A stretch of DNA of 63,643 nucleotides, the filler included, from Olpidium bornovanus S191 (taxonomy: Eukaryota; Fungi; Olpidiomycota): assembly GCA_017911155.1 (NCBI GenBank). It is 30 parts of 30 records of this genome, joined end to end, with 100 filler letters (N's around TTAATTAATTAA, not from the genome) between each part and the next. Parts side by side here need not be neighbours in the genome. Positions count along the whole stretch, not along the records: positions 52,179 to 53,229 come from JAEFCI010003129.1; 29 more parts are not named here. One strand, written 5' to 3'. Below are positions 52,179-52,382 of this stretch, piece after piece. Made by a program: the position numbers and the translations under genes. Every line of letters starts with the position of its first letter. The first letter of the stretch is position 1. The notes under the pieces are model-generated. The model was given only the letters and a program-made list of their open reading frames with translations. It was not told where the DNA came from and ran no database searches.

Positions 52179-52382
52179 CCCAGCCCAGATCCCGCCCCGG
52201 CTCCCGCCCCGGAACCCTGGAAGAAGGGCTACGGCGGTTACGGGAAGAAGGGATACGGCGGCGGATACGGGAAGAAGGGATACGGCGGCGGATACGGGAG
52301 GAAGGGATACGGCGGATACGGAAAGAAAGGCTACGGCAAGGGCAAGGGTTACGGGAAGGGCAAGGGCAAGGGATACTACTGA
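52179..52382 (+). CDS. 3' end of a Gly/Tyr/Lys repeat-peptide precursor (N-terminus off the contig)
   Basis: Translation from 52179: PSPDPAPAPAPEP-WKKGYGGYGKKGYGGGYGKKGYGGGYGRKGYGGYGKKGYGKGKGYGKGKGKGYY*. All four Gly codons and both Lys codons are used, so the repeat is conserved at protein level. AATAAA follows 21 nt after the stop. Confidence 0.85.
   Translation, partial: PSPDPAPAPAPEPWKKGYGGYGKKGYGGGYGKKGYGGGYGRKGYGGYGKKGYGKGKGYGKGKGKGYY

What the first reader, a model, noticed from the sequence alone, without database searches (positions are those of the whole stretch)
52218..52382. The same peptide has the composition of a DOPA/dityrosine wet adhesive or a Gly-rich cationic antimicrobial
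Seen: the 54 residues from Trp onward are 26 Gly, 14 Lys, 12 Tyr, 1 Arg and 1 Trp, with no acidic residues and Tyr repeatedly placed two positions from Lys. Established: the sandcastle-worm cement protein Pc-1 is built from VGGYGYGGKK repeats with Tyr converted to DOPA, and mussel foot proteins use Lys next to DOPA for wet adhesion. Gly-rich cationic peptides also act as antimicrobials. Inference: if it is not cut at KK, this could be a convergent fungal glue (for example spore attachment or encystment) or a wall protein cross-linked through Tyr.
Basis: inference. Interest (0 to 1): 0.75.

Follow-up and report, generated by a model that had tools for sequence, protein, structure and literature searches.

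The report
Gly-Tyr-Lys repeat tail, function unproven
The end of a gene that is cut off by the contig edge encodes a real, very unusual 54-residue tail made almost only of glycine, lysine and tyrosine; it resembles known glue, tanned-shell and defence peptides of animals, but nothing here shows which of these it is, if any.

Summary
From Trp (52218) to the last codon (52379) there are 26 Gly, 14 Lys, 12 Tyr, 1 Arg and 1 Trp, with no acidic residue. Ten of the 12 Tyr sit in G-Y-G, and eleven have Lys or Arg two positions away. The pattern comes from about four tandem 24/27-nt units (KKGYGG(G)YG) plus a (KG)n end, so it is one or two motifs copied, not many independent events. The gene's 5' part is missing; only 13 Pro/Ala-rich residues remain. 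Signal peptide, taxon and protein family therefore cannot be tested. There is no Pfam family, no solved structure and no confident fold. Among 1.84 billion representative proteins the only real look-alike is an unnamed secreted modular protein from an environmental eukaryote-like contig. Best reading (about 0.4): a disordered polycationic tail of a probably secreted protein that binds anionic surfaces and coheres or cross-links through Tyr. Cleavage at KK, an antimicrobial role, an intracellular role or no function remain open.

The parts
52179..52217 (+). Last 13 codons of the upstream part of the protein: Pro/Ala-rich, mildly acidic linker PSPDPAPAPAPEP. The reading frame is cut off by the piece's left edge.
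   Evidence: Translation; 12-nt repeat TCCCGCCCCGGC x1.9 at 52190-52212.
52218..52379 (+). 54-codon Gly/Lys/Tyr tail: 26 G, 14 K, 12 Y, 1 R, 1 W; net charge about +15.
   Evidence: No confident fold and essentially no secondary structure in a single-sequence AlphaFold2 model (pLDDT 56.7, pTM 0.14).
52221..52337 (+). Tandem 24/27-nt units, each encoding (K/R)KGYGG(G)YG: four full units plus the start of a fifth. Units 2 and 3 are identical.
   Evidence: TRF rows at 52219-52337 and 52232-52337, period 27, 85-86% matches. Codon alignment: 5 silent and 1 K>R change, whole-codon indels.
52332..52372 (+). Terminal (GGC AAG)n stretch encoding GKGKGYGKGKGKG, without dibasic sites, followed by the C-terminal YY.
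   Evidence: TRF period 6 x6.3 and period 18 x1.9; translation.
52380..52382 (+). Stop codon TGA.
52403..52408 (+). AATAAA, the only canonical poly(A)-signal hexamer in the piece, 21 nt after the stop. GC falls from 60-65% to 45% here.
   Evidence: Inference: this is the 3' UTR of a eukaryotic gene.

Best explanation
This is the real C-terminal tail of a protein-coding gene, probably eukaryotic, whose 5' part lies off the contig. After a Pro/Ala-rich linker comes a 54-residue polycation of Gly, Tyr and Lys. It is probably intrinsically disordered and was built by recent tandem duplication of a 24/27-nt unit (KKGYGG(G)YG) plus a (KG)n end. I infer that the protein is secreted and that the tail works by composition rather than by fold. 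The 15 Lys/Arg would hold it on anionic material such as wall or coat polysaccharides, polyphosphate, melanin, mineral or membranes. The 12 Tyr, nearly all Gly-flanked and exposed, would supply cohesion through cation-pi and pi-pi contacts and would be good substrates for oxidative cross-linking (dityrosine by a peroxidase or laccase; DOPA/quinone-Lys by a tyrosinase) if such an enzyme is co-secreted. That makes it a sticky, curable tail for a wall, matrix or attachment protein. Shown: the sequence, the frame, the repeat origin and the rarity. Inferred: secretion, disorder, binding and cross-linking.
For: Coding frame: silent variation between units 5:1 (P about 0.003), whole-codon indels, GC3 0.78, stops in the in-register antisense frame, and AATAAA 21 nt after the stop with a GC drop. 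Composition and charge. No fold: pLDDT 56.7, pTM 0.14; no Pfam or PDB match. Secretion by analogy: phmmer over 1.84e9 representatives gave one genuine look-alike, P0002 (E 4.5e-6; 71% over 48 aa with filters off). P0002 and its relatives P0003 and P0004 start with signal-peptide-like hydrophobic N-termini and alternate acidic spacers with 28-42 aa G/Y/K blocks of the same composition (G 38-42%, K 21-29%, Y 24-29%). The last block of P0002 ends ...KGYYYG, compared with ...KGYY here. Here too the block follows an acidic (D, E) spacer. Chemistry by analogy: GYGGYGK x2 matches the DOPA-precursor consensus quoted in PMC6007483, and Gly-flanked Tyr favours peroxidase cross-links. Basic Gly-rich Tyr/DOPA cement proteins are described in PMC12621633. 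Cation-pi cohesion of cationic/aromatic adhesive proteins without DOPA is described in PMC11907405. A tick Gly-rich cement protein phase-separates through C-terminal cation-pi and pi-pi contacts (bioRxiv 10.1101/2023.03.27.534361).
Against: No N-terminus is available, so there is no signal peptide and secretion is only an analogy. Likeness to P0002/P0003 is limited to a low-complexity block. The 13 upstream residues do not carry their conserved spacer motif (SD..D..GR.LL..QA.Q), so the likeness may be convergence. A chain with +15 charge in 54 residues repels itself, so it would need salt or a polyanion partner to condense. Lys is a weaker cation-pi partner than Arg (established knowledge). 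No oxidase, expression data or genomic context is available. The taxon is unknown. Recent repeat expansion (two identical units) is also what a young tail of little functional importance would look like.
Confidence: 0.4

Rival explanations
1. Repeat-peptide precursor (KEP-like). The tail is cut after KK/RK by a kexin-type or yapsin-type protease and trimmed by a carboxypeptidase. This would release two GYGGYG, two GYGGGYG and one 17-residue GYGKGKGYGKGKGKGYY peptide as signals or effectors.
For: Regular dibasic spacing: 4 KK and 1 RK bracket 6-7-residue cores. An acidic spacer precedes the block, and P0002/P0003 look like poly-precursors with acidic spacers and GRKL ends. KK is accepted 'to a lesser extent' as a fungal KEX2 site (PMC6339444).
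Against: The preferred sites KR and RR are absent. The last 17 residues have no dibasic site, and Lys continues as KGKG, which suggests selection on composition rather than on discrete cores. Cores of Gly and Tyr only carry little information. The signal peptide is unknown, and the organism and its proteases are unknown.
Confidence: 0.15
2. Host-defence peptide: an extended, Gly/aromatic-rich cationic antimicrobial, whole or after release from its carrier, acting on anionic membranes or on nucleic acids like nematode NLP/CNC peptides.
For: The tail is basic and Gly/aromatic-rich and carries two exact YGGYG motifs, the signature of NLP/CNC peptides. NLP-31 is reported to bind DNA without membrane disruption (PMC6780910). 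Charge is +15 with no acidic residue.
Against: There is no hydrophobic face and no Cys. NLP/CNC peptides have not been found outside nematodes, and direct activity data are sparse even there (PMC6780910). No sequence hit links the tail to any antimicrobial family. It is attached to a larger protein by a Pro/Ala linker, which is unlike small stand-alone antimicrobial genes.
Confidence: 0.1
3. Intracellular low-complexity tail: a Lys/Gly/Tyr region of a nuclear, nucleolar or RNA-binding protein that acts as a nuclear-localisation signal, nucleic-acid binder or condensate-forming sticker-spacer region.
For: G/Y-rich regions with basic residues are classic phase-separating, RNA-binding domains (established knowledge; condensate literature listed). 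KK clusters resemble nuclear-localisation signals. No signal peptide has been seen.
Against: Such domains normally use Arg (RGG/RGY), not Lys; here the ratio is 14 K to 1 R. No RNA-binding protein appeared among the hits of the exhaustive phmmer search; the only look-alike is secreted. Pro/Ala linkers of this kind are more usual in extracellular proteins (my own knowledge).
Confidence: 0.15
4. No specific function: either a young, tolerated micro/minisatellite expansion at the 3' end of a gene, or non-coding repeat DNA that happens to be open in this frame.
For: Units 2 and 3 are identical at DNA level. All three + frames are open. There are no homologues with this tail. The piece is a 1-kb contig, typical of repeat-broken assembly. 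No transcript evidence is available.
Against: Silent to replacement changes are 5:1 in frame 0 only. Indels are whole codons. GC3 is elevated. The stop is followed at once by an AT-richer stretch with AATAAA. The same block type recurs in independent secreted proteins.
Confidence: 0.15

Closest known systems
Sabellariid tube-worm cement proteins Pc-1/Sa-1 (and Pc-2)
   Same: They are basic, Gly-rich short tandem repeats with Gly-flanked Tyr and paired Lys. [quoted passage not shown] The 7-mer GYGGYGK of a DOPA-precursor consensus peptide (PMC6007483) is present twice.
   Different: The unit here is KKGYGG(G)YG, with no Val, Ala or His. Here it is a 54-residue tail behind a Pro/Ala linker, not a whole protein of repeats. 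No homology was detectable. The organism is unknown but was not read as an animal. No DOPA, tyrosinase or polyanionic partner (Pc-3-like) is known here.
P0002 / P0003 / P0004: unnamed secreted modular proteins from environmental eukaryote-like contigs (JGI Ga0103770_1005759; ENA ERZ15185897)
   Same: They have G/Y/K blocks with almost the same unit (KKGYGGGY against KKGYGGGYG). Identity is 71% over 48 residues with filters off. Composition is alike, each block is preceded by an acidic spacer and starts with aromatic-KK, and the last block ends in GYY(YG).
   Different: Their spacers share a conserved motif (SD..D..GR.LL..QA.Q) and their blocks end in GRKL; neither is seen in the window's fragment. 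Their blocks are shorter (28-42 aa) and contain some D, E, H, S and T. Their function is unknown, so they do not explain the tail.
Nematode NLP/CNC (caenacin) Gly/aromatic-rich defence peptides
   Same: They are basic, Gly- and Tyr-rich and carry the YGGYG motif, which is present twice here. They are thought to be secreted and processed (PMC6780910).
   Different: They use Arg rather than Lys, are small stand-alone genes, and have been reported only in nematodes. No sequence match was found.
Trematode eggshell precursors (p14, p48; Pfam PF08034) and plant Gly-rich wall proteins (Pfam PF07172)
   Same: They are Gly/Tyr-rich secreted structural proteins hardened by Tyr oxidation: quinone tanning by tyrosinase in schistosomes (PMC4699917) and peroxidase cross-links of Gly-flanked Tyr (PMC6007483).
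   Different: Neither Pfam model matches the fragment at E up to 1. P0002 reaches only 25.4 bits against the PF07172 cut-off of 30. The Lys content here (26%) is, as far as I recall, higher than in those families.
Fungal KEX2-processed repeat proteins (KEPs)
   Same: They have tandem short repeats separated by dibasic pairs.
   Different: KEP sites are mainly KR or RR and only to a lesser extent KK (PMC6339444). Here there is no KR or RR. The signal peptide is unknown, and the final third of the tail has no dibasic site.

Membership tests
Pc-1-type polychaete cement protein | Basic protein built of Gly-rich repeats with Gly-flanked Tyr and Lys pairs | tested here: met
   KKGYGG(G)YG x4 plus a KG-rich end; 10 G-Y-G; pI 10.1. 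This is likeness of kind only; the unit differs from VGGYGYGGKK.
Pc-1-type polychaete cement protein | Sequence homology to Pc-1/Sa-1 | tested here: inconclusive
   No such hit. It is not known whether these animal proteins are in the libraries, and low complexity makes homology undecidable.
Pc-1-type polychaete cement protein | Signal peptide, secretion from cement cells, Tyr converted to DOPA | not testable with these tools
   The N-terminus is off the contig. Modification needs mass spectrometry or staining.
P0002/P0003 modular secreted G/Y/K-block proteins | G/Y/K block with KKGYGGGY-type units | tested here: met
   phmmer E 4.5e-6; 71% over 48 aa with filters off.
P0002/P0003 modular secreted G/Y/K-block proteins | Conserved spacer SD..D..GR.LL..QA.Q before each block and GRKL after it | tested here: not met
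   The 13 residues before the block are PSPDPAPAPAPEP, and the block ends GYY-stop. Only 13 residues of spacer are visible.
Plant-type glycine-rich protein family (PF07172) | Match to the Pfam model at the gathering score | tested here: not met
   No hit at E up to 1. The model includes the signal peptide, which is missing here.
Trematode eggshell synthesis protein (PF08034) | Match to the Pfam model | tested here: not met
   No hit at E up to 1.
Fungal KEX2-processed repeat protein (KEP) | Internal near-identical repeats | tested here: met
Fungal KEX2-processed repeat protein (KEP) | KEX2 sites (KR or RR, less often KK) between the repeats | tested here: inconclusive
   0 KR, 0 RR, 4 KK, 1 RK. 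KK is a minor site according to PMC6339444.
Fungal KEX2-processed repeat protein (KEP) | N-terminal signal peptide | not testable with these tools
   The ORF is cut by the piece's edge at 52179.
Nematode NLP/CNC peptides | Basic, Gly/aromatic-rich, YGGYG or YGGWG motifs | tested here: met
   YGGYG occurs twice; motif definition from PMC6780910. This is likeness only. The family is reported as nematode-restricted, and no sequence hit was found.

The most novel reading that the evidence does not exclude
The module would be oxidised (DOPA or dityrosine) or would coacervate with a polyanion to glue or harden a spore, cyst or wall. The environmental P0002/P0003 proteins would then be a sister invention in other protists. 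That would make quinone-tanning or cation-pi glue chemistry a recurrent solution outside animals.
Probability: 0.12. Interest if true: 0.7.

Novelty: new member of a known kind. Interest (0 to 1): 0.35.

Why it matters
If the tail is secreted and oxidised or coacervating, it would be a very compact natural glue or curing module: 54 residues and three amino-acid types. It would come from a lineage where attachment chemistry is essentially undescribed, and it would be easy to synthesise and test. Together with the unnamed P0002/P0003 proteins it would define a class of microbial Gly-Tyr-Lys block proteins. As it stands it is a well-verified but functionally open low-complexity tail on a truncated gene. 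Its value is as a lead, not a result.

Tried and rejected
- Pfam on the fragment and on every open stretch of 60 codons or more in the piece gave nothing at or near threshold. The only weak hits (DUF6793 E 0.009, GspH E 0.05-0.1, DUF6338 E 0.13) lie on downstream ORFs and I take them as chance.
- The word-indexed protein search with the 67-aa fragment scored 2109 candidates and none reached E 0.01.
- The ESM Atlas gave no usable hit.
- The exact-product look-up found nothing on record.
- PDB sequence search found nothing.
- Rfam, tRNA, and terminator and promoter scans found no RNA family or tRNA. Terminator-like sites (2 against 1.0 expected) were at chance. The 3 promoter-like matches (0.2 expected) are consensus matches only, listed under noticed in passing.
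- The back-translated motif GYGKKGYGG gave one hit each in JGI metagenomes and in 596 Gb of prokaryote genomes. Both are out of frame or non-repetitive chance matches. Viral contigs gave none. I therefore rejected a prokaryotic or viral origin of the motif class.
- P0001 (E 9.6e-9) was rejected as spurious: it is a P450-like protein interrupted by more than 60 copies of YDTSVGKKV.
- BLASTP with default filters found no alignment to P0002. The likeness appears only with low-complexity filtering off, so its E-values are not evidence of homology.
- Frames +1 (GRRDTAADT...) and +2 (EEGIRRRIR...) and the two open antisense frames were considered and rejected, because unit-to-unit differences would all be replacements there.
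- Literature searches for the exact motifs found no paper with KKGYGG, GYGGYGKK, GYGKGKG and similar strings. Only GYGGYGK was found, inside a quoted DOPA-precursor consensus.
- The taxon could not be determined.

Full report
**What is there**

The piece (52179-53229, 1051 bp, 60% GC) opens in the middle of a reading frame. Frame 0 reads PSPDPAPAPAPEP, then Trp, then 53 residues made only of Gly, Lys, Tyr and one Arg, then TGA at 52380-52382. Eleven of the 12 Tyr have Lys or Arg two positions away, and ten are in G-Y-G. The tail has a mass of 5.6 kDa, pI 10.1 and net charge near +15.

**Is it more than chance, and is it coding?**

The regularity is that of a DNA tandem repeat. Tandem Repeats Finder reports period 27, 4.0 copies, 85% matches, score 156, followed by GGCAAG x6.3. 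The protein units are KKGYGGYG / KKGYGGGYG / KKGYGGGYG / RKGYGGYG, then KKGYG-KGKGYGKGKGKGYY. Units 2 and 3 are identical in DNA. The Tyr-Lys spacing is therefore one motif copied a few times, not many independent placements.

All three forward frames and two reverse frames are open over the repeat, so an open frame alone proves nothing. Frame 0 is nevertheless the coding one, for these reasons:

- The minimum changes between aligned units are 5 silent and 1 conservative (K>R), all but one at frame-0 third positions. Random substitution would make only 23.5% silent (P about 0.003).
- Both length differences between units are whole Gly codons.
- GC3 is 0.78 against 0.57 and 0.58 at positions 1 and 2.
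- The in-register antisense frame has stops.
- GC drops from 60-65% to 45% right after the stop.
- The only AATAAA of the piece lies 21 nt downstream of the stop.

I take it as the 3' end of a real, probably eukaryotic gene. The remaining 850 bp gave no Pfam family, tRNA or Rfam family.

**What cannot be known from this piece**

Only 13 residues precede the tail. The length of the protein, its N-terminus (signal peptide or not), its domains and the organism are all out of reach. 'Fungal' in the finding could not be checked.

**Relatives**

- Pfam gave none.
- The word-indexed search of 5.8 billion clusters gave none at E 0.01.
- The ESM Atlas gave no usable hit.
- PDB gave none.
- AlphaFold2 without an alignment gave no confident fold (pLDDT 56.7, pTM 0.14, essentially no secondary structure). 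This is consistent with disorder but weak as evidence.
- The exhaustive phmmer run over 1.84 billion representatives gave two hits.

Of the two phmmer hits, P0001 is spurious: a P450-like protein interrupted by more than 60 copies of YDTSVGKKV. P0002 (179 aa, E 4.5e-6) is a genuine look-alike. It has a hydrophobic signal-peptide-like N-terminus, then two modules. Each module is an acidic spacer followed by a 42-residue block HYKKGYGGGYKKGYGGGYKKGY..., and the last block ends KKKGYYYG. Its contig reads like a eukaryotic mRNA with a long 3' UTR.

Searching with P0002, and with an alignment, found only P0003 and P0004. These are clearly homologous to P0002: the spacer motif SD..D..GR.LL..QA.Q is conserved, and the blocks end in GRKL.

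With low-complexity filters off, the window's tail is 71% identical to a P0002 block over 48 residues. With default filters BLASTP finds nothing. The window's visible spacer does not carry the family's motif. The relation is therefore 'same kind of block', possibly convergent, not demonstrated homology.

The back-translated motif GYGKKGYGG is essentially absent from JGI metagenomes, from 596 Gb of prokaryote genomes and from viral contigs. One chance, out-of-frame hit turned up in each of the first two collections. The block type is rare.

**Comparison with known systems (literature)**

- Pc-1 and Pc-2 of the sandcastle worm are basic proteins with Gly-rich repeats and with part of their Tyr hydroxylated to DOPA (PMC12621633).
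- PMC6007483 quotes Waite's DOPA-precursor consensus peptides VGGYGYGK, GGGFGGYGK and GGGYGGYGK, and notes that Gly-flanked Tyr favours peroxidase cross-linking. The tail contains GYGGYGK twice.
- Schistosome eggshell proteins are hardened by tyrosinase quinone tanning (PMC4699917). Their Pfam family does not match the fragment.
- Cationic/aromatic adhesive proteins cohere by cation-pi contacts even without DOPA (PMC11907405).
- A tick Gly-rich cement protein phase-separates through C-terminal cation-pi and pi-pi contacts, with an acidic N-terminal part delaying onset. This arrangement recalls the acidic linker followed by a cationic tail here.
- Nematode NLP/CNC peptides are basic and Gly/aromatic-rich, and are typified by YGGYG (PMC6780910). 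That motif occurs twice here.
- Fungal KEX2 sites are KR or RR and 'to a lesser extent KK' (PMC6339444). The tail has 4 KK, 1 RK and no KR or RR, and its last 17 residues have no dibasic pair.

**Reading**

The most economical account is a disordered polycationic Gly-Tyr-Lys tail on a probably secreted protein. It would bind anionic extracellular material through Lys and cohere or cross-link through exposed Tyr. I give this about 0.4. The sequence, frame, repeat origin and rarity are shown. Secretion, disorder, binding and cross-linking are inferred by analogy.

The rivals are:

- cleavage at KK into GYGG(G)YG peptides (0.15);
- an antimicrobial role (0.10);
- an intracellular nucleic-acid-binding or condensate tail (0.15), disfavoured by Lys instead of Arg and by the secreted look-alikes;
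- a young, functionless or non-coding expansion (0.15), disfavoured by the silent-site pattern.

Its analogy is sound and now documented. Its functional proposal remains untested and untestable with this piece.

**Novelty and score**

Gly/Tyr-rich basic repeat proteins are a known kind. This would be a new, unusually pure member (three residue types) in an unidentified non-prokaryotic organism, with only three unnamed environmental look-alikes. Because the gene is truncated and every functional step is inference, I score interest at 0.35. The convergent-glue reading (probability about 0.12) would deserve about 0.7 if shown.

Noticed in passing
L003:129-668 (P0002); L004:736-1578 (P0003); P0004: A small, unnamed family of secreted modular proteins from environmental eukaryote-like contigs. 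Each has a signal peptide, then 2-4 modules of acidic spacer (conserved SD..D..GR.LL..QA.Q) plus a 28-42 aa Gly/Tyr/Lys block plus GRKL. The layout looks like a poly-precursor of cationic Gly/Tyr peptides. Only three sequences were found among 5.8 billion clusters.
   Followed up: partly
P0001 (1041 aa): A P450-like protein interrupted by more than 60 tandem copies of YDTSVGKKV. It is probably an assembly or gene-model artefact, or an intronic minisatellite read through. It hit the query only through GKK-Y periodicity.
   Followed up: no
window 52506-52877 (+) and 52532-52855 (-): Two in-register antisense ORFs of 123 and 107 aa with raised GC3 (0.74 and 0.71), downstream of the tail gene. There is no Pfam family beyond a sub-threshold DUF6793 match (E 0.009, 16.5 bits against a cut-off of 27). 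This could be an exon of a neighbouring gene on either strand, or chance in GC-rich DNA.
   Followed up: partly
window 52219-52372: All three forward frames and two reverse frames stay open across the repeat. Frame +2 would read EEGIRRRIREEG... An automatic gene caller could pick the wrong frame here.
   Followed up: yes
window 52952-52981 (+) and 53145-53173 (-): Three sigma-70-like promoter matches against 0.2 expected from shuffles. They lie in locally AT-richer stretches and probably mean nothing if the DNA is eukaryotic.
   Followed up: no
L003:1330-1345: The P0002 transcript-like contig has a 760-nt 3' UTR with TGTAA near its end. As far as I recall this is the poly(A) signal typical of green algae, whereas the window's gene is followed by AATAAA. 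This hints that the two come from different lineages.
   Followed up: no
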